Of a stretch of DNA of 64,000 nucleotides, positions 55,424 through 63,779 are shown piece by piece. Location: assembly GCA_010909165.1 (NCBI GenBank), contig VJWM01000254.1, forward strand, positions 154,855 through 218,854, in the 5' to 3' direction. The notes below the pieces were generated by a model that was not told the DNA's origin, searched no databases, and saw nothing but the letters and a program-made list of their open reading frames with translations. Both the position numbers and the translations under genes were made by a program. The DNA comes from Anthoceros angustus. Lineage: Eukaryota; Plantae; Anthocerotophyta. Numbering within the stretch: the stretch's first letter is position 1; each line of letters starts with the position of its first letter.

Positions 55424-58400
55424 CTACGACGTTTGACGTGGTGGTGGAGCCAGGCCTAACCATGAGGCTTCAAACTGGCCTCCGAATGTCTTGCTTAGCT
55501 GCAGACCGTGAAGTGGAGAGGAGGCGCTGTCCCTGGATTTCCCAGCAACAATTTGAGTACCTGCACCTGGAGAATGTAGCACTGGCACCTGTAACCTTCT
55601 TCCACTTATGGTCATCGTTGACTTCGGGCTGCTAAGGTCAGCTGATGAAGAAGGAAGTGTTACCAAGTTGGACGACTTGGCAGGGCTCGAACAGGTGGCA
55701 GTCACGGACAGAGAAAGCTGCGTGGACAACTCTTTGTCCTGCAAGATAATTGGCCGCAGACTTCCTGGACCTGAGCTCGTCTCACCACCTTTGCGCCTTT
55801 TCGCCGCCGGAAATACGTCCAGGCCTGGCGATGAGCTCCCTCGCTTTCCAGAAGATGTTTTTCCTTGTCTGCTGTTATATGGATCATGGGCCATGTCGCC
55901 ATTGTGGATAGTTCCTGGGCTTCGTCCAGGCTCGGCGTTGGATACTACCTGCAAATCCAATTGCAAGTTTCTTGCTAGTCTCCTCTCTAAGATGCCCGGA
56001 TGAATTTCCACATCATTGCAATCCCGTTGTTTGGGCTCATTCGATGTAGATGCCATCCTTCCCGGCGTCAAATATAATTCAACCCTCCCTACGTCTGAAC
56101 CGGTAACAGGAAACTCTTGACGGGGACCATCCACTAATGGTTCTGAGTCCCCGAGAATGCTGACATTATGCTCAGAGTTCTCTTGCTGGTGCTGGTGCTG
56201 ATAGTCTGCCCGAAGAGTGGATCTCGCCTGTGATGGACTTAATTGGCTGTCTCCAAGCCCTTCATAAATACTTGGCTGGTGTGACTCCAAGTGACGGTTA
56301 TCCCCATTAGAGAATGCTTCGTGCAGGTTTACCTGATGCTGAAAGAGGCTACTTATATACTTTTTCGGAGGCAGTCTTAGCAGCATCTGAATACTCTCAG
56401 GACCAGGTGCCATAGAAGACCCAGCAGCTGCTGGCAGCAGGGGCAACAGAAAATCTTGCATGCTAAAACTTCCAGTCGAAGCCATGGGTGCGCTAGTATT
56501 TGGCCAAGCAAAGCCACTCAGAGGTTTTGGGAGCTGTAACTCAACCTGCCCTTTCTGGACGTTGTCCGAGTCCACCCGTGCAAGTTCACCATGCGGGTCC
56601 GGGACAGACCTGCCGCTCTTATCACAGGATGCCCTCGTTGTATCTGCACCCTCATTTCCGCTGCTTGTGCTTCCCGATCCGGAGCAGTATTTCGCTACAT
56701 TGGTTGCCTGGTCGAATGACGACGATATATGAAGTGCGTTAGCCGCCGGCCCCTGGGGACAGGTGTCCTTCACCTGGCCATACTTTTGATTCTGCTGCTG
56801 GAATCCCATAGCCTTCATGATGAATTGCATATCCTCCTATGTACACGAAACGGAGCTGTAAGATGCCACAGAAAACATGCCAAGCAAACGAGCACACGCA
56901 TAGGTATACGACATGTAGTTGCGGACGTACCTGTATCCGGTTTACAACCTTGCACATCAGTGAGAGTTGAGCCTCCATATCGATCTTGGCTGCCTCCATT
57001 TGGTCAAACCGCATCTTCCACTCCTATTCGAACGGGAAAGCCGGGAAGATACTTCAGACAAGCATTGCGCGTCAGAGCGGAAGTCAGAGAACATTTCAAG
57101 TGTGCTAGGTACCTCAGAAATGCTCTGGACTTGAGACCCAAATTTTTCTATATGCTCTTGGTCACGTCTGTCTTGCTTGCGTAATCTGTTTGCAGACATA
57201 CAGGTAACTATAGTAAGTTTGAGATAAATTGCTGAAGCATCAATACTAGAAGTCGCTGCGGTGCAATTTGGTCCAAAACACAGTGCTGTGCTTAGTTCAG
57301 GCGCTTTCAAATCGTGGAGACTAGATATATACCCTCCCATTTGACTTTGGCTCAAATCCACATTCTGCTCCTCGAGCTGATAGACTTCATGCTGATCCGC
57401 ATCTACGTTCGACTGCAAGAAGTAGCCCAAATTAGAAACTTTCAGGCAATATGGAGATTCTGCGGGAGACCTCTATGTGCTGCAGTGTCTGTAGACGTAC
57501 AGGAACAGGTTACCAGGTATCTAGAGAACAAGATAGTGCAACAGTTCTGAGACAAACGAGTTTAGCATATAGATTGAATACAGACCGAGTTTACAGATTT
57601 CCTCCGCTAATAACCAACCCCCCTTTAGACCTTTCAATACAGCAATGGGTTAAGGGGTTTCAGCGAGCAGTTATTACTTTACGGAGGGAAGCAGACTGGT
57701 GACTCAGGATCCGGTTCTCAAATTCCCTGCGGATCAGCGTCATTTCTAATTCCATTTTCTGCGTAAGAGTTTATAACAACATTCGCATTCATGAGACTCT
57801 GAATTAGTTGAAGACTCTACAATGACGTCGAATTCAAATCCATCCGCACAATACATTCTGACATGCATCTGACATGCATTACGGTAAGTTTACACAACTG
57901 TTTCACTGGATGTAGGATATGTGGATAAGGGCTTTTCCAACCTAGCTAGTTTCGAGCAGCATACATTTCAAGGGTGTAGGGATGTCTTTCTTACCTCGAA
58001 CTTCTCCTTCATGTCCGGTTTAAACTCCGTTTGTCCACTTTCAACCAGGACCTTCCTCTGTTCTGATAGCTCATGGGCACTCGTCTTTGCCGTCACCTTT
58101 TTGGTCAGGTCTTTCACTTGAACAGAGAGGGATTTCATTTCACTGTTCATGTCGTAGAACATTCGAATTAGATATCCGAAGATTTGACGTTGTCTGCACT
58201 TTAGGACTCTCATGAGATATGAAATCCATATTTGCAGCTGAAAGAACGGATGTCACAGACATGAACGATGCACAAGTTAGGAATTCCTCTGACCTCCGCA
58301 TTTTGGATACCATTTCCTGAAGGCGCTTCATCTCCGCAGCTTCCGTGGCAGACATCCCTTGGGTGTAGATGTACTCGCCCCTGGCAGGTACTCTGTCTCC

Positions 58401-61400
58401 AGGCTTCCAGCCGGGCGGTGGAATCCACGAGGGATCATCTATTCCAGCTGCTTTCCTGACCTCCATTAGACTAGCATCTTCAAGCCAATACTCCATGGCT
58501 CCATCGGCGTTGTAAGTTCGCCTGAAACGTTCACCAGAATTGACGATAGTATCCGTCATGTGTTTTAGAAGGTGATCGAGGAGCCCTGTGTCTCCGATGT
58601 GTTTCCTCGCCTCTTCCCTTAGAGCAGGTCGGAGAATAGGCTTTCCTGGTATAGCACCACGCTGATGCATGATCTCTATAAGTTTCAGCTGGGCTGATTT
58701 GTATCTGTTCAAAACAACATTCAAATGATAAAGCGGTCATCTCCTAAGACAGTATCACCTCTAAAGTATTGCGCCTTCAAAAAGAGACAACTGAAAATTC
58801 AAGAGGATTTGGCTCCGCGTGTAGGTAAAACACCTTTCACTGGACCACCTTCCCTGCATTTCCTTCGGGAGTTTCAGGATACTGGCAATCGTAGCAGGTT
58901 TGGTACTCGGCTCCTTAGTAATCATGCTCACATCGGTTGCCATCGATGAGGAAGGCCCATTGCTCTCCGGATTTGGTTGACTTTTGTTTGCTTTGCCTGC
59001 TTTGGAAGATTTTCTTTTCCGAGAAGCAGCTTCCAGCTTGTCGTGTTCATGATCAACCGGAACAACGGTTCCACAGCTGGGATTCCCTCGAAACTTGACT
59101 TTTCTTCTCGAGCCCCAGGTGATTTCTTCGTCGAGTTCCTCTCTCTTGAGCCTCTCTGCATCGGACGCTGCATGCCTGGCAATAAGGTCTATCCCGGACA
59201 GCAGTATGGACCCATCCATTCCACTTGTTACCCTTGAAGGCCTGTGGTCGTTCAGTCTGTCAATCATGTCGAGATTCCGCTGTGGATCGACATTTTCTTG
59301 TCCGCGCCGTTTTGCTGGTCCAAGATATGTTTGGTTACGGCTTTCTCTCAACTGCTCAAAATATGTAGGCTGTTGCGCTGCGGCTCCTTTACCAAGAGGG
59401 CTTGCGCTCTTTCCATCCATGGGGAAGTCGAGAAATTGAGCAAGCTGTAGAAGTTTTCCGTCAGGATGAGAGCACGGCAGCAGCTTCTGGCGTCGTGTTT
59501 GTAGGCCATGTGCATGCTGAGTCGATGCCCCTTCCTGGCCTTGAAAAAGTGGAATCCCATGGCGATGCTGCGGATTGATATGAGCCCTTGACGACAGAAA
59601 CTCCCTTGTAGCTGAAATGTGCCCTTGAGCATTTCTTGAGGGCGAACTGGTAGTTACAGTCGACTCGTACTCAAAGCTCAAGCATGACTTCAGTGAGCCT
59701 GTGAATTCTGCTTTGCTTGCCTGCCCACCGCCACGGTGGTCTGCCACCCAAAAAGTCCGGAGGTGACCCTGGTGCAGACTTTCCGTGCAGGAAAGCTGCC
59801 GCACCAAGACGTCTTTGGCTCGCTCGGTAGTGAAGGTAAATTGTTCATCCATTTCGGGTTTGGTGCCCATCACAGTCAGCTCTGTTGGGGTTCTTGCCTG
59901 GTTGTCGACCACAGGTGCGTCTGACCTGTTGACACCAAAATACATGTCGAGAGAGGCCGCACTCGGATACTTCACGGTGACATTCATGCTCGTCGTCTCT
60001 GCAACCTGTACAGCAGGCATCCACAACAAATGCACCAGTTCAGAGAAGTGTGCACTCCCATCCAAGGGACTTCACAATGTGAACATTGTATATCCAGAGT
60101 GACATCCGGAGTCTGCTGTTGGAAGATGCTCATACCATTACAACCCGGACCAGCTTTATGCTGGGCGGAGCTTCTGCAGGTAAGCTTCCATGGGCAATCT
60201 CGAAAATAGTTCCAGCCTGTCGCAATTCCTCATCACACGAATCGAACAGTCCAGTATGCATAGTCTGCGAATCTGAGGCTCCAAGGTCCTCCTCCTTCAA
60301 GGTAAAGAAACCATCCTTACTTTCCGCAGAATAGGTGTATCCACAGACGTAGACATCCAGAGGCCCTGACGGTCTGGACGAGACAGAAGAGTGCATCAGC
60401 AAAAGGGGTGGGATCACGTTGACAAAAAAAGGCAGAAGGAGACTCCCAAAACGAAAACGAGAACGTAAGAAAGAAAGGTGGGTGCGGGGGACAGGGTTCG
60501 GCATACTTCAACCGTAACTTGGCGTGCTCTCTCCGGCTGATGACTTTGCAGCGTCCAAGCACATGGTCTGCTGGCTGCGTGTCAAAATAATCCGTGTCTG
60601 AGCAAATCCGTTAAGTCCTGACAGAGACGCAACCCTGGAGGACCCAGACGCTTCGAGAAGCGCGACGCGAGCAGCTAATTGGACAAATGAATTGCTCCGC
60701 TCTAAGGCGATGGATCTCCATGCTTTCACGACTCTTTTCGGTGGCCGTTGTACAGATCTGTAGGCCCACGCAACAGAGACTCTCTAATCGACCTCACAAT
60801 AACAAAAAAAAACAGCTGCGCGCACCACGCCATCATCAGGACGCGTGCGACATCGCTATACCAAAACCGAAAGGACGTAGATCCAGCTCCACTGAAAATA
60901 ACAAAAGAAAGGATACGAAACACCTCGTCCTTGCCGAGGTCTGGAGGAAGGGGATGAGATACGTCAGCCGGTCGGTAGAACCTGCGTTGCAGGCGGGGCA
61001 CACAAGCGTCACACACACCTGGTAACAGCCTCCCATCCATGCATAGTAGCGGGGCGGGGGGATCCCAGACGAGGAAAGAAGCCTCTCACCAGCGAACCTG
61101 CAGCAGCGCCTTGCCCTGGTCGTCGCGCGACCTGCTCTCGATTCTGGCAATGTAAGGTTCTAGCTGAGAATCCGCTGGGTACAAGTAGATGTAGTCACCT
61201 GTTCACACAGCGGCGGCGCAGAGGTTAGCCCGGACAGCAAGCTCAAGCTCAAGCGCAGGGCAGGGCAGGGCGCACCGAGAGCAGCAAACAAACGAAGACG
61301 GCTTGAAGGCAAACAAAGAAGAAGAAGAAGAAGCTGAGATAGATGCTGGACATGTATGCGCTGAGCACTTCAACCTGGCGTCCAGACCGACCGCGTGCAC

Positions 61401-61411
61401 TTCTTGATCAT
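55424..61411 (-). CDS. SWI1: SWI1/DYAD/AMEIOTIC1-family protein with an N-terminal BAH domain, about 1336 aa, 13 exons
   Basis: Exons (- strand) 61411-61375, 61198-61090, 60981-60917, 60597-60507, 60373-60136, 60005-58834, 58704-58294, 58142-57995, 57758-57678, 57412-57333, 57185-57113, 57023-56931, 56836-55424; total 4011 nt with GT-AG phases matching. DYAD motifs: FEIAHGSLP..VRVVMV..KYPS, GRWSSERY, LREEARKHIGDTGLLDHLLKHM, RFRRTYNADGAMEYWLE, DPSWIPPPGWKPGD, coiled coil, C-terminal WLGLA. The first exon and the small coiled-coil exons are the least certain. Confidence 0.88.
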
Positions 61412-63779
61412 GATCTCCTACCCTGCCTCGGGAGCTCATCTACAGACCTGCAGGCGCTATTTGAGCAAGGCCGAGGCGGACTGCCATGGCGGCAACAAGA
61501 TATCCTCCTGTGCAGCTATCTATCCGGCTGGCTGTGCAACTACCGATCTAAGCTATCGGACTCCAAAACGACAAGCACAGACATGTATGACAATCTGCGA
61601 CTACTACTAGGCACAATTGGTCCGATCCCGCATCACTCCTCCGCAAGCAAGCTCATGCTACATGTGTGTGCGCGTGGACAGATCGTTCTGCCAAGTCGGC
61701 GTACCAATGCAGAGCGGATCACCATTGGCTGCAGTGAAGGGTTGCGGCACAGGGGCAGAGGCAGAGGCAGAGGCAGAGGCAGAGGCCGAGGCGGGGGCAT
61801 CCCCCTGCTGCAGGGTTGCGGTTGTAGGCTGCGGGGAGCGCGCCATCGCAGAGCCTCAGAACGGCAGCTCCAGGACAGCTCCGGTAGCAGCGCCTCGCCT
61901 CCTCGGGGTACCATGTGCCGAATGCAGAATCCAGCGCTGGCATGCAGCGCGGCCGGCGCAGCACAGCGCGGCTTAGCGCAGCGGTAGCGGTACCGGTGGA
62001 GCTCCGTCTAGAAGCTTTTGCCTGTGCCCTCGCGGGAGGGAGAGCGTGAAGGGCAGCGCAGGCGTCGGTCGTGCACAGCGGGCCATATGACAGGCGCGGA
62101 GGGGACCGGGAGCTGAAGCGCGTCCATCCATGAATCGCATCGCAGGATTTCATTATTCAAATCACAGCCGTGACGGAATGAAATTAGGGCAGGGGAAGGG
62201 ACGAGACGACGAGACGACGAGACGGGCGCCGGGCCGGGCCAATTTTTCATGTACTGGGGGGGCTGGGCGCTTGGAGTTTTGATGGGGTGTACGGCTCACG
62301 GCTCACGGCTCACACCTCACGACTGATCCTGATGAAGCTCACGACCCGCGCGGATGGGGATGGCCCGGGATGGCCGCATGTCATGATGCGCTGATGCATG
62401 CCTTTGCATGGGCTGGGGTTTATGGGAGCGATCGACACGTGTCCGGGGCGGGACCAGCGTCGCCATCGGTCCATCGGGCGGGGCCTGGCAATATCCCCGC
62501 CGGATCGCCCACACGAAGCGGCAAGCTTTGCCTTTGCTTTGCAGAGGGGACGGTACCGGACACCGGTGATGATTCCGGTTACGGTAGCGTAACCTGTCCC
62601 CGGCTAATGGGCAGATGGAACAAGGCTCTGGTTCCATTTGCGTCACCCGGCCCGGCAAGTTGCCGGCTTGGAGGCGCAAAATGTGTGAGTTGCTGGAAGC
62701 CGGGGCCTTTGCACAAAGCCGCTGCCGCTTGCTGCCAGGCTGGGCTGGTGTGTGTGTGCGTCACGGGCCGGGCGTCAGGTACCCGCTTTCGTCCGCACAC
62801 CCGCCCGCTGCAAACCCCAGCTCCCTCTCCCGGGTCAGGTAGGTGAGCCAGCACCAGCCACCAGCAGCCGTGGTTAAGGCTTGCACGGCGCCTGGGACTG
62901 GGACTGGCTTAATGGCGGAAGATTGACTGACCACCAGATCGCCGGAAGTAATTGCCCGCAAGTGCAAGCAATCTGGGAGAATCCCTGCCACAAGAATGCA
63001 GGCTTTGATCAAGGCTCGTCGCCTAAACTGGCAGGATCTGCAATAAACCCAGGCACACCTTGCCGCCTGCCTTGCCCTTACTCGTCCTTGCGGCTGGGCT
63101 GGTGCCGCTTGCCTATCCGGCCCCTACGGCCGCACTACAAGGACGTCGCACCTCAAATGGCCGAGGCAGCTCATGTTGTCCCCTGAAAAACCCCTTTCCA
63201 CCTCCCGCCACCACATCGTAGTAAAACGTCCACCACACAAGAACAATTCCATTTCAAATGAGAGATGTTAGCTTCTTCAATTGGGTGGTGGTATCATTTC
63301 ACTGAAATCTCGTCCTTCAATCTCTTACGGTTTCCAAGTCCGGTGCGGTGGGTGACTCTAGGTCTTATGCTCACCCATTTAGATCTGGGGCTATATAGCT
63401 GCTCTATCTTATCCTTTAGTAGTTGCACATGTTATTTTCTTACTTTGTGATGTACACCTAGTTTTACTAAAATATAGCCTAGTTCTCTCCATCAAACGGT
63501 GTCAAGTCAATCATTCAAGTGAAGGAGTGGTCTCCTGTGAAGGAACTCACAAGACAAGTCCGGTGTGCCCAGGAAAAGGGGCAACATCACAAAACACACA
63601 ATGCGAGTTACCCCGTTGTCACAAGGAGTACAAAGCCACGATTTGGGCACGAAACAAGTTTGCGAAATGTCATATTGTTGTACGAGCTCTCCACCTTGCA
63701 GCTTGTAAAACTTTGATACTTGCACCAAAATGGGCCGAAGAGTAGCAGTGGCGCGATGACTATGTTGTACATGATGTGC

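What the first reader, a model, noticed from the sequence alone, without database searches (positions are those of the whole stretch)
60300..61411. BAH histone-reader domain fused to a SWI1/DYAD/AMEIOTIC1 meiotic regulator
Seen: four small exons splice in phase into the DYAD ORF, giving MIKKCTRSVWTPGDYIYLYPADSQLEPYIARIESRSRDDQGKALLQVRWFYRPADVSHPLPPDLGKDEVFHTDYFDTQPADHVLGRCKVISRREHAKLRLKPSGPLDVYVCGYTYSAESKDGFF. This runs without a stop into the DYAD N-terminal motif FEIAHGSLP. Established: it follows the EBS/SHL BAH pattern (GDCVLM..PYVARVE..RWYYRPEE..ELFLSDHYD..IEGKC.V..YYCRFEY). The Tyr/Trp/Tyr cage that binds H3K27me3 is conserved here (PY, RW-F-Y). Angiosperm SWI1/AM1 proteins, which control meiotic entry and cohesin protection, have no BAH domain to my knowledge. 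Inference: a direct link between methyl-lysine chromatin marks and meiotic cohesion control, either ancestral and lost in flowering plants or lineage-specific.
Basis: partly seen in the sequence, partly recalled or inferred. Interest (0 to 1): 0.85.

Follow-up and report, generated by a model that had tools for sequence, protein, structure and literature searches.

The report
BAH domain on a SWI1/DYAD gene
This plant gene really does join a BAH chromatin-binding domain to the meiotic cohesin regulator SWI1/DYAD/AM1, but the same layout is already on record in ferns, conifers, a clubmoss and charophyte algae, so it looks like the old form of the family that flowering plants lost.

Summary
The fusion is real; the first exon and the novelty claim are not.

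- **Splicing:** the junctions of exons 2 to 8 (61198 down to 57995, minus strand) are canonical GT-AG. They are used in spliced contigs of three related organisms from three studies. One 2,602-nt contig carries all of them.
- **One exon holds both parts:** exon 5 (60373-60136) encodes the last BAH strands and the DYAD N-terminal motif in one open frame.
- **First exon:** The supported one is 61846-61705.
- **BAH test:** a profile built from Pfam-certified BAH domains of DYAD-like proteins ranks exons 2, 4, 5 and 3 as the four best of 2,708 six-frame fragments, in collinear order.
- **Cage:** the SHL cage positions are Tyr/Trp/Tyr here. The His that clamps H3S28 is Tyr, and the nearest solved sequence is polybromo BAH1, so H3K27me3 reading is unproven.
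- **Distribution:** BAH plus the family's winged-helix core (PF25874) is already annotated in Ceratopteris, Adiantum, Cryptomeria, Taxus, Diphasiastrum, Closterium and Chara. It is absent from every angiosperm hit and from the annotated moss and liverwort models.

I found no paper that discusses this. Verdict: a new member of a catalogued but unstudied architecture.

The parts
61705..61846 (-). Exon 1 as supported here. ATG at 61846, 142 nt, ends in phase 1. It encodes an Ala/Ser-rich N-terminus and the first BAH strand, ending in the conserved Gly-Asp split across the junction.
   Evidence: The X8 contig continues 5' of exon 2 with 28 letters identical to 61705-61732. There is a GT donor and an in-frame stop four codons upstream of the ATG. 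By eye, the tail resembles the stretch before the GD motif in Cryptomeria and fern BAH.
61090..61198 (-). Exon 2, the BAH core. It holds the first cage Tyr (PYIARI) and two bases of the cage Trp codon.
   Evidence: Family BAH profile E 1.8e-9, the best fragment in the window. 51% identical to Diphasiastrum BAH. Both junctions are used in X8.
60917..60981 (-). Exon 3, BAH. It completes the cage Trp codon and holds the third cage residue (FYRP).
   Evidence: Profile positions 66-89, E 0.21, collinear with the other exons. Junctions to 61090 and 60597 are in X8; the X3 and X4 contigs join exons 3 and 4 at the same place (60597 to 60919, two other letters between).
60507..60597 (-). Exon 4, BAH (TDYFDTQ...GRCKV).
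   Evidence: Profile positions 90-130, E 1.3e-4. Junctions are in X3, X4 and X8.
60136..60373 (-). Exon 5. It encodes the last BAH strands (DVYVCGYTYSAE), a roughly 35-residue acidic linker and the start of the SWI1/DYAD N-terminal conserved region (FEIAHGSLP), all in one exon.
   Evidence: Profile positions 127-153, E 4.8e-3. The DYAD N region gives tblastn hits to lycophyte and angiosperm DYAD proteins. The junction to exon 6 is in X3, X4 and X8.
58834..60005 (-). Exon 6. The rest of the SWI1/DYAD N-terminal conserved region (about 60005-59740), then a long poorly conserved stretch.
   Evidence: Together with exon 5: tblastn E 7.6e-25 to Diphasiastrum residues 361-476 and 1.3e-14 to P0020 (source not looked up; residues 26-152 of 409); the named angiosperm DYAD proteins P0009, P0014 and P0016 hit the same stretch at E 2e-11 to 7e-11. 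No Pfam hit and no homologue of 215-683 aa.
58294..58704 (-). Exon 7, the family core domain (PTC1-like winged helix, PF25874 WHD_plant_repro).
   Evidence: phmmer gave 267 proteins at E<=0.001 and 103 at E<=1e-30. The hits are named DYAD or AMEIOTIC 1 and carry PF25874. 79% identical to Diphasiastrum and 78% to Calypogeia.
57995..58142 (-). Exon 8, a Lys/Glu-rich stretch after the core.
   Evidence: Junctions 58294 to 58142 are in X3, X4 and X8. The contigs leave the genome at 57995.
57113..57412 (-). Exon 9. The start is supported; the end is inferred.
   Evidence: The X3 loose end beyond 57995 reads, by my own translation, as the residues encoded just after the acceptor at 57412. AG/GT borders and frame are intact.
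56931..57023 (-). Exon 10 (inferred).
   Evidence: Splice-site and frame logic only.
55424..56836 (-). Exon 11 (inferred), the C-terminal 470 residues with the stop at 55424. It contains a short motif shared with angiosperm DYAD C-termini (about 56539-56209).
   Evidence: Weak tblastn hits of several DYAD proteins at 56539-56209, the best E 0.002. The full 11-exon model is 4,182 nt and 1,393 codons with no internal stop. The X3 contig length beyond exon 8 (1,859 nt) fits exons 9-11 (1,806 nt) plus a short UTR.
61375..61411 (-). It is not supported as coding. It lies inside intron 1 of the X8 form.
   Evidence: No contig uses a donor after 61375. X3 and X4 read through to about 61346, and in that form the ATG at 61411 meets a TGA after 13 codons.
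61346..61658 (-). An alternative or retained 5' segment seen in the contigs of organisms A and B. It is joined to exon 2 from about 61346.
   Evidence: records 11 and 15 and the joints 61198/61208 to 61346. Its meaning is not resolved.

Best explanation
**What it is.** One 11-exon gene on the minus strand (61846 to 55424, about 1,393 residues) encodes the non-angiosperm form of the SWI1/DYAD/AMEIOTIC1 family. Its parts, in order, are:
- an N-terminal BAH domain of the polybromo/RSC/EBS/SHL subgroup, with the aromatic cage intact (Tyr, Trp, Tyr);
- a short acidic linker;
- the SWI1 N-terminal conserved region;
- a long poorly conserved stretch;
- the PTC1-like winged-helix core (PF25874);
- a Lys/Glu-rich stretch and a long C-terminal tail.

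**Origin.** The BAH domain is an old part of the family. It is present in charophytes, a lycophyte, ferns and gymnosperms, and it is absent from flowering plants.

**Likely function (inferred, not shown).** In Arabidopsis, residues 1-300 of SWI1 bind PDS5 and displace WAPL, which keeps cohesin on meiotic chromosomes (PMC6465247). The matching region here probably does the same. The BAH domain would add a direct hold on nucleosomes or a histone tail, possibly a methyl-lysine mark, placing that activity on particular chromatin.
For: **Gene structure.**
- All 11 exons have AG/GT borders and the frame is open throughout.
- The exon 2-8 junctions are used in spliced contigs of three related organisms from three studies. 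One contig spans them all.
- The BAH end and the DYAD N motif lie in a single exon.

**BAH domain.**
- The exons align collinearly with BAH domains of DYAD-like proteins that pass Pfam PF01426 above the cut-off: Ceratopteris 63.4 bits, Adiantum 52, Chara 35.4.
- They are the top four fragments in the six-frame profile scan.
- The family profile hits polybromo BAH1 at 2e-23, SHL at 1e-15 and EBS at 6e-15.
- The AlphaFold model of the lycophyte BAH (pLDDT 82) matches 1w4s, 5z8n and 5znp with Foldseek probability 1.00.
- The PtSHL cage residues Tyr41/Trp63/Tyr65 (PMC6013494) align to Tyr/Trp/Tyr here.

**SWI1/DYAD identity.**
- The core exon hits 103 proteins at E<=1e-30; the hits whose names were looked up are called DYAD or AMEIOTIC 1.
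- The N region matches residues 26-152 of P0020 (a 409-aa hit whose source was not looked up) at E 1.3e-14; the named angiosperm DYAD proteins P0009, P0014 and P0016 hit the same stretch at E 2e-11 to 7e-11.

**Ancestry.**
- PF01426 plus PF25874 occurs in Chara, Closterium, Diphasiastrum, three ferns, Cryptomeria and Taxus, and in an intronless gene on a metagenome contig.
- On the core-domain tree these do not form one clade but are spread along it.
Against: - There is no RNA from the window's own organism. All transcript evidence is from relatives 90-96% alike, and the runs are only guessed to be RNA, although the spliced GT-AG joints argue for RNA.
- Pfam gives no hit on any single exon. 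The joined protein was not scanned.
- Exons 9-11 are inferred.
- No function was tested. PDS5 binding, a meiotic role and histone binding are all extrapolated.
- The SHL His88 position is Tyr. The nearest solved relative, polybromo BAH1, is not an established methyl-lysine reader to my knowledge.
- Annotated moss and liverwort homologues lack BAH. So either it was lost several times or those gene models are truncated.
- Contigs of the gene turn up in ten runs from six studies. If those are ordinary vegetative samples, the gene is not restricted to meiosis.
Confidence: 0.8

Rival explanations
1. This is a novel or lineage-specific fusion whose BAH is an EBS/SHL-type H3K27me3 reader, coupling Polycomb marks to meiotic cohesion.
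For: The cage Tyr/Trp/Tyr is conserved and Asp90 of SHL is conserved (PMC6013494). EBS and SHL are among the best structural matches, with TM 0.71-0.73.
Against: The fusion is not lineage-specific: the same architecture occurs in at least nine other public proteins from charophytes to gymnosperms. His88, one half of the H3S28 clamp, is Tyr here and in the family consensus. Polybromo BAH1 scores better than SHL or EBS by profile. There is no PHD partner. Aromatic-cage BAH domains read different marks, including H3K9me2, H4K20me2 and H3K27me3 (PMC6013494 discussion).
Confidence: 0.15
2. The architecture is as described, but the BAH is not a methyl-lysine reader. It would bind the nucleosome surface, an unmodified histone tail or a partner protein, as reported for the Rsc2, ORC1b and Sir3/Orc1 BAH domains. 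In that case it acts as a general chromatin anchor or a protein-interaction module.
For: The nearest solved sequences are polybromo-1 BAH1 and Rsc1/Rsc2. ORC1b BAH binds unmodified H3 through another surface (PMC6013494). In Closterium and in P0146/P0147 the first cage position is Phe, not Tyr.
Against: Trp and the second Tyr of the cage are kept in every well-modelled family member from algae to conifers, and the first position stays aromatic. That is what one expects if the pocket is in use.
Confidence: 0.35
3. In this organism the gene is not a meiosis-specific cohesin protector but a broadly expressed chromatin factor. On this view the meiotic SWI1 role is a later specialisation in seed plants.
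For: Contigs of the gene are found in ten runs from six studies of related organisms, with spliced forms in three of the four runs laid. That would be unusual for a transcript confined to a few sporocytes. The protein is about twice the length of Arabidopsis SWI1 (639 residues in PMC6465247) and has extra regions.
Against: The tissues of the runs are unknown. The N region and the core are clearly orthologous in sequence to DYAD/AM1.
Confidence: 0.2
4. Artefact. The BAH exons belong to a neighbouring gene, and the link is read-through or a chimeric assembly.
For: The tool warns that a contig across two genes does not prove a single transcript. X3 and X4 show a different 5' structure.
Against: The BAH C-terminal strands and the DYAD N motif share one exon and one open frame. 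The junctions recur in three organisms. The same order of domains is found in independent gene models from ten other sources.
Confidence: 0.03

Closest known systems
Arabidopsis SWI1/DYAD and maize/rice AMEIOTIC1
   Same: The winged-helix core (PF25874) and the N-terminal conserved region lie within the part of SWI1 (residues 1-300) that binds PDS5 and displaces WAPL (PMC6465247).
   Different: The angiosperm proteins have no BAH domain and are roughly half as long. The function of the window's gene is untested.
Database-only BAH plus PF25874 proteins: Diphasiastrum complanatum (1,528 aa), Ceratopteris richardii KP509_24G022600, Adiantum (two species), Cryptomeria japonica 'AMEIOTIC 1 homolog', Taxus chinensis, Closterium, Chara braunii CBR_g32476
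   Same: The same domain order: BAH, DYAD N region, winged-helix core. Against Diphasiastrum the BAH exons are 34-51% identical and the core 79%.
   Different: In ferns, gymnosperms, the lycophyte and Chara an extra conserved segment follows the BAH, and in the land-plant members the DYAD N region starts only at residues 260-390. In the window and in Closterium the BAH is followed almost directly by the DYAD N motif. None of these proteins has been studied, as far as my searches show.
Polybromo-1 (PBRM1/BAF180) BAH1, and yeast Rsc1/Rsc2 BAH
   Same: The best sequence-profile match among solved structures (2e-23; 1w4s at 2.6e-19) and the top Foldseek hit. Shared motifs include GDY.Y, WFYRP, EVF..DY and DVYVC.
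   Different: Polybromo has His at the first cage position and Asn at the SHL Asp90 position. Its context is a SWI/SNF remodeller subunit with bromodomains.
EBS / SHL (and AIPP3, BAHCC1) H3K27me3-reading BAH domains
   Same: The fold, and all three cage positions (PtSHL Tyr41/Trp63/Tyr65), plus Asp90 (PMC6013494).
   Different: His88 is Tyr. There is no adjoining PHD finger. Sequence-profile scores are lower than for polybromo. Binding specificity is unknown.

Membership tests
BAH domain (Pfam PF01426) | Match to the Pfam BAH profile above the gathering score | tested here: inconclusive
   Single exons of 21-79 residues give no Pfam hit, as expected for pieces of a 121-position model. Homologues with the same N-terminus pass: 63.4, 52, 51.8, 58.8, 45.3 and 35.4 bits against a cut-off of 30.8.
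BAH domain (Pfam PF01426) | Collinear homology over the whole domain to certified BAH domains | tested here: met
   A profile of the homologues' BAH ranks exons 2, 4, 5 and 3 first among 2,708 fragments. In exon order 2-3-4-5 they cover profile positions 30-153 without overlap or a gap of more than 4, for a summed score of 75.5 bits.
BAH domain (Pfam PF01426) | BAH beta-barrel fold | tested here: met
   Met for the lycophyte homologue only. The AlphaFold model has pLDDT 82 and pTM 0.75. Foldseek gives probability 1.00 to 1w4s, 5z8n, 6oxb and 5znp. The window's own domain was not folded because it would have to be joined.
EBS/SHL-type H3K27me3-reading BAH | Aromatic cage Tyr41/Trp63/Tyr65 (PtSHL numbering) | tested here: met
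   The profile-to-5znp alignment, the exon alignment and the residue list in PMC6013494 give Tyr in PYIARI, Trp across the exon 2/3 junction and Tyr in FYRP.
EBS/SHL-type H3K27me3-reading BAH | His88/Asp90 pair that anchors H3S28 | tested here: not met
   The window has Tyr at the His88 position (TDYFD). Asp90 is kept.
EBS/SHL-type H3K27me3-reading BAH | Measured binding to H3K27me3 | not testable with these tools
   Needs ITC or peptide arrays.
SWI1/DYAD/AMEIOTIC1 | PTC1-like winged-helix core (PF25874 WHD_plant_repro) | tested here: met
   The local Pfam copy seems to lack this model: the core exon and proteins that carry PF25874 in the precomputed table get no such hit. Exon 7 matches proteins that carry PF25874 in the precomputed tables at E down to 1e-117.
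SWI1/DYAD/AMEIOTIC1 | N-terminal conserved region of the family (inside the PDS5-binding residues 1-300 of AtSWI1) | tested here: met
   tblastn of family proteins onto exons 5-6: E 1.3e-14 for P0020 (source not looked up), 2e-11 to 7e-11 for the named angiosperm DYAD proteins P0009, P0014 and P0016, and 7.6e-25 for Diphasiastrum.
SWI1/DYAD/AMEIOTIC1 | PDS5 binding, WAPL antagonism and a meiotic phenotype | not testable with these tools
   Known only for Arabidopsis, maize and rice (PMC6465247).
SWI1/DYAD/AMEIOTIC1 | Orthology rather than paralogy to angiosperm SWI1/AM1 | tested here: inconclusive
   The FastTree of the 136-residue core roughly follows the species tree, and the window falls among bryophyte and lycophyte sequences. 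The tree is short, supports were not examined, and sampling is thin.

The most novel reading that the evidence does not exclude
The ancestral green-plant SWI1/DYAD protein carried a working methyl-lysine-reading BAH domain. That domain placed WAPL antagonism, or control of meiotic entry, on chromatin bearing a particular histone mark. Flowering plants, and perhaps mosses, later lost this module and now rely on partners such as PDS5 for targeting. The window's gene and the Ceratopteris gene would then give a direct route to test a link between histone marks and meiotic cohesion.
Probability: 0.25. Interest if true: 0.7.

Novelty: new member of a known kind. Interest (0 to 1): 0.45.

Why it matters
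SWI1/DYAD/AM1 controls meiotic entry and protects cohesin in flowering plants. How it reaches chromatin is only partly understood.

The evidence here suggests the older form of the protein carried a BAH domain with an intact aromatic cage, kept from charophyte algae to conifers and lost in angiosperms. That gives a concrete, testable idea for how cohesin protection could be tied to chromatin state. It also names tractable species that still have the domain, such as Ceratopteris.

The caveat is that this is not a discovery of a new architecture. Automated annotation already records it in at least nine public proteins. What seems to be missing is anyone noticing it or testing it.

Tried and rejected
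- **Pfam on exons.** Pfam on each exon and on the large open frames gave no hit at E<=10. The exons are too short, and the local Pfam copy seems to lack PF25874, so this says nothing against the domains.
- **Homology search with exon 6.** 390 aa, candidates of 215-683 aa: nothing found.
- **Search with Diphasiastrum residues 20-480.** It found only itself.
- **ESM Atlas with P0146.** No usable hit.
- **treekit build.** Killed by the sandbox. I used FastTree instead, so there are no tests of clades.
- **Scan's earlier notes.** They hold nothing on this gene.
- **Paper searches.** BAH together with SWI1, DYAD, AMEIOTIC or SWITCH1 turned up nothing relevant.
- **Joined protein.** Exons were joined only inside scripts, to count length, phase and stops.
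- **Rejected readings.** I also rejected 'lineage-specific fusion', and 'separate transcripts', because the two parts share one exon.
- **Organism.** I could not identify it. The core domain is closest to lycophyte, liverwort and moss homologues at 74-79%.
Full report
**1. What is in the sequence**

The gene is on the minus strand. I read 62000-57800 and 58000-55300. I checked borders, phases and stops by script.

The model has 11 exons:

| Exon | Coordinates |
|---|---|
| 1 | 61846-61705 |
| 2 | 61198-61090 |
| 3 | 60981-60917 |
| 4 | 60597-60507 |
| 5 | 60373-60136 |
| 6 | 60005-58834 |
| 7 | 58704-58294 |
| 8 | 58142-57995 |
| 9 | 57412-57113 |
| 10 | 57023-56931 |
| 11 | 56836-55424 |

All borders are AG/GT. 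The model is 4,182 nt, or 1,393 codons, with no internal stop and a stop at its end.

Exon 5 carries, in one open frame, both the last BAH strands and the DYAD N-terminal motif FEIAHGSLP.

**2. Transcript evidence**

No run holds the window's own organism. Ten runs of four related organisms hold parts of the stretch at 90-96% likeness. I laid four of them on 57900-61700.

- **X8 (organism C).** One 2,602-nt contig lies on 61196-61088, 60979-60917, 60597-60510, 60371-60134, 60003-58834, 58704-58294 and 58142-57995. The skipped parts end in CT..AC, which is GT..AG on the minus strand. That is exons 2 to 8 in one spliced molecule.
- **X3 (organism B) and X4 (organism A).** Their contigs use the junctions 58294|58142, 58834|58704, 60134|60003 and 60507|60373, and join exons 3 and 4 at the same place (60597 to 60919, with two other letters between).
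- **X1 (organism A).** This run is unspliced and collinear with the genome, so it looks like DNA.

The spliced form is therefore seen in three organisms from three studies.

The caveats are these. The runs are only guessed to be RNA. They are relatives, not the source organism. Contigs are not single molecules. Even so, the two parts share exon 5, so a link by read-through can be set aside.

**3. The first exon**

The X8 contig runs 364 nt beyond exon 2. After two letters that stand for 61197-61198, its loose end equals window 61705-61732 over 28 letters. The implied intron 61704-61199 has GT..AG ends. The exon upstream has an ATG at 61846, preceded by an in-frame stop four codons earlier.

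By eye, its last dozen residues resemble the stretch before the GD motif in the Cryptomeria and fern BAH domains.

X3 and X4 instead carry 61658-61346 collinearly and join to exon 2 from about 61346. In that form the ATG at 61411 meets a TGA after 13 codons. I could not tell whether this is a retained intron, an alternative start or a BAH-less isoform.

**4. Is it a BAH domain?**

Pfam finds nothing on the separate exons. They are 21-79 residues against a 121-position model. I worked through homologues instead.

- **Homologues.** The core exon (58704-58294) was searched against 1.84 billion representatives. Among the hits, these proteins pass Pfam BAH above the cut-off at their N-termini: Adiantum P0007, Ceratopteris P0008/P0151, Chara P0037, and two unnamed proteins, P0146 and P0147.
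- **Profile scan.** I built a profile from ten such N-termini and ran it against all 2,708 stop-to-stop fragments of the window. The four best are exon 2 (E 1.8e-9), exon 4 (1.3e-4), exon 5 (4.8e-3) and exon 3 (0.21). In exon order 2-3-4-5 they cover profile positions 30-67, 66-89, 90-130 and 127-153. The fifth fragment scores E 8.3.
- **Identity.** Against the Diphasiastrum BAH the exons are 51, 43, 34 and 48% identical.
- **Solved structures.** The family profile (A1) hits polybromo-1 BAH1 at 2.2e-23 (1w4s at 2.6e-19), SHL at 1.2e-15, EBS at 6.2e-15, BAHCC1 at 1.2e-11 and Rsc2 at 1.4e-9.
- **Fold.** The AlphaFold model of the lycophyte domain has pLDDT 82. Foldseek matches it to 1w4s, EBS 5z8n, PBRM1 6oxb and SHL 5znp/5znr with probability 1.00.

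So this is a BAH domain of the polybromo/RSC/EBS/SHL subgroup.

**5. The cage**

PMC6013494 names Tyr41, Trp63 and Tyr65 as the H3K27me3 cage of PtSHL. It also names His88 and Asp90 as the pair that holds H3S28.

In the profile-to-5znp alignment and the exon alignment, these positions fall as follows:

| PtSHL residue | Window |
|---|---|
| Tyr41 | Tyr of PYIARI (exon 2) |
| Trp63 | Trp whose codon spans the exon 2/3 junction |
| Tyr65 | Tyr of FYRP (exon 3) |
| His88 | Tyr of TDYFD (exon 4) |
| Asp90 | Asp of TDYFD (exon 4) |

The cage is intact but the H3S28 clamp is only half kept. Across the family the Trp and the second Tyr are kept, and the first position is Tyr or Phe. The mark that is read, if any, cannot be deduced from this.

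**6. Is it SWI1/DYAD/AM1?**

- **Core.** The core exon matches 267 proteins at E<=0.001 and 103 at E<=1e-30. Named ones are 'DYAD', 'DYAD-like', 'AMEIOTIC 1-like' or 'PTC1-like winged helix-turn-helix domain-containing', and they carry PF25874.
- **N region.** Exon 5's end plus exon 6's start match residues 26-152 of P0020 (a 409-aa hit whose source I did not look up; E 1.3e-14), the named angiosperm DYAD proteins P0009, P0014 and P0016 (E 2e-11 to 7e-11) and residues 361-476 of the Diphasiastrum protein (7.6e-25). This lies inside the part of AtSWI1 (1-300) that binds PDS5 and evicts WAPL (PMC6465247).
- **C-terminus.** A weak C-terminal motif is shared too, at 56539-56209.

**7. How common is the architecture?**

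PF01426 together with PF25874 is precomputed for these proteins:
- Ceratopteris richardii;
- Adiantum capillus-veneris and A. nelumboides;
- Cryptomeria japonica (RefSeq name 'protein AMEIOTIC 1 homolog isoform X1');
- Taxus chinensis;
- Diphasiastrum complanatum;
- Closterium sp. NIES-65.

My own scans add Chara braunii, P0147 (a protein from a Logan contig) and P0146. P0146 is an intronless 546-residue gene on a gene-dense 28.8-kb metagenome contig.

No angiosperm hit has BAH, including Amborella and Nymphaea. Nor do the annotated models of Sphagnum, Physcomitrium, Ceratodon and Calypogeia. I could not check whether those models miss 5' exons.

On a FastTree of the core, the BAH-bearing proteins are spread along the tree rather than forming one clade. 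The window sits among bryophyte and lycophyte sequences, at 79% to Diphasiastrum and 78% to Calypogeia.

The simplest reading is that BAH is ancestral in the family and was lost in angiosperms. Whether it was also lost in mosses and liverworts is open.

**8. Literature**

I found no paper that links BAH with SWI1, DYAD or AM1. PMC6465247 notes only that SWI1 has homologues in moss.

**9. Verdict**

H3K27me3 reading is unproven.

The architecture is already catalogued by automatic annotation in many species. This is therefore a further member of that group rather than a new kind, but it is an unstudied one with a clear experimental path.

Noticed in passing
window 61757-61792 (minus strand, exon 1): A GCCTCT microsatellite (about five and a half units) lies inside the coding first exon and encodes an Ala-Ser run. 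Its length is likely to vary between relatives.
   Followed up: no
window 61346-61658: Contigs of organisms A and B keep this segment, which is inside intron 1 of the X8 form, and join it to exon 2 from about 61346. In that form the ATG at 61411 is a short upstream open frame, and the first in-frame Met after exon 2 lies in exon 5, just before the DYAD N motif. This may be a BAH-less isoform or just unprocessed RNA.
   Followed up: partly
window 60257-60283: Relatives A and B skip 27 nt in frame here, in the acidic linker between the BAH domain and the DYAD N motif. The linker length is therefore not constrained.
   Followed up: no
P0001 (Aristolochia californica), P0002 (Coptis chinensis), P0003 (Ranunculus cassubicifolius), P0004 (Rumex salicifolius): These angiosperm models contain two to four tandem copies of the winged-helix core in one predicted protein. 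They could be internal duplications or fused tandem genes.
   Followed up: no
P0168 (Diphasiastrum complanatum), residues about 75-80: A two-residue insertion (WFEFYR against WFYR elsewhere) sits exactly where the window has its exon 2/3 junction. That suggests a slightly misplaced splice site in that public gene model.
   Followed up: no
L001:3001-4641: An intronless BAH plus PF25874 gene of 546 residues sits on a compact metagenome contig between RNA polymerase Rpb6, an alcohol-dehydrogenase-like gene and an NAD kinase gene. It may come from a small green alga, which would push the fusion back before the streptophytes. The taxon was not determined.
   Followed up: partly
Pfam library used by the scan tool: The local Pfam copy returns nothing for the DYAD core, or for proteins whose precomputed annotation lists PF25874 (against 25). 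A blank from it is not evidence against that family.
   Followed up: yes
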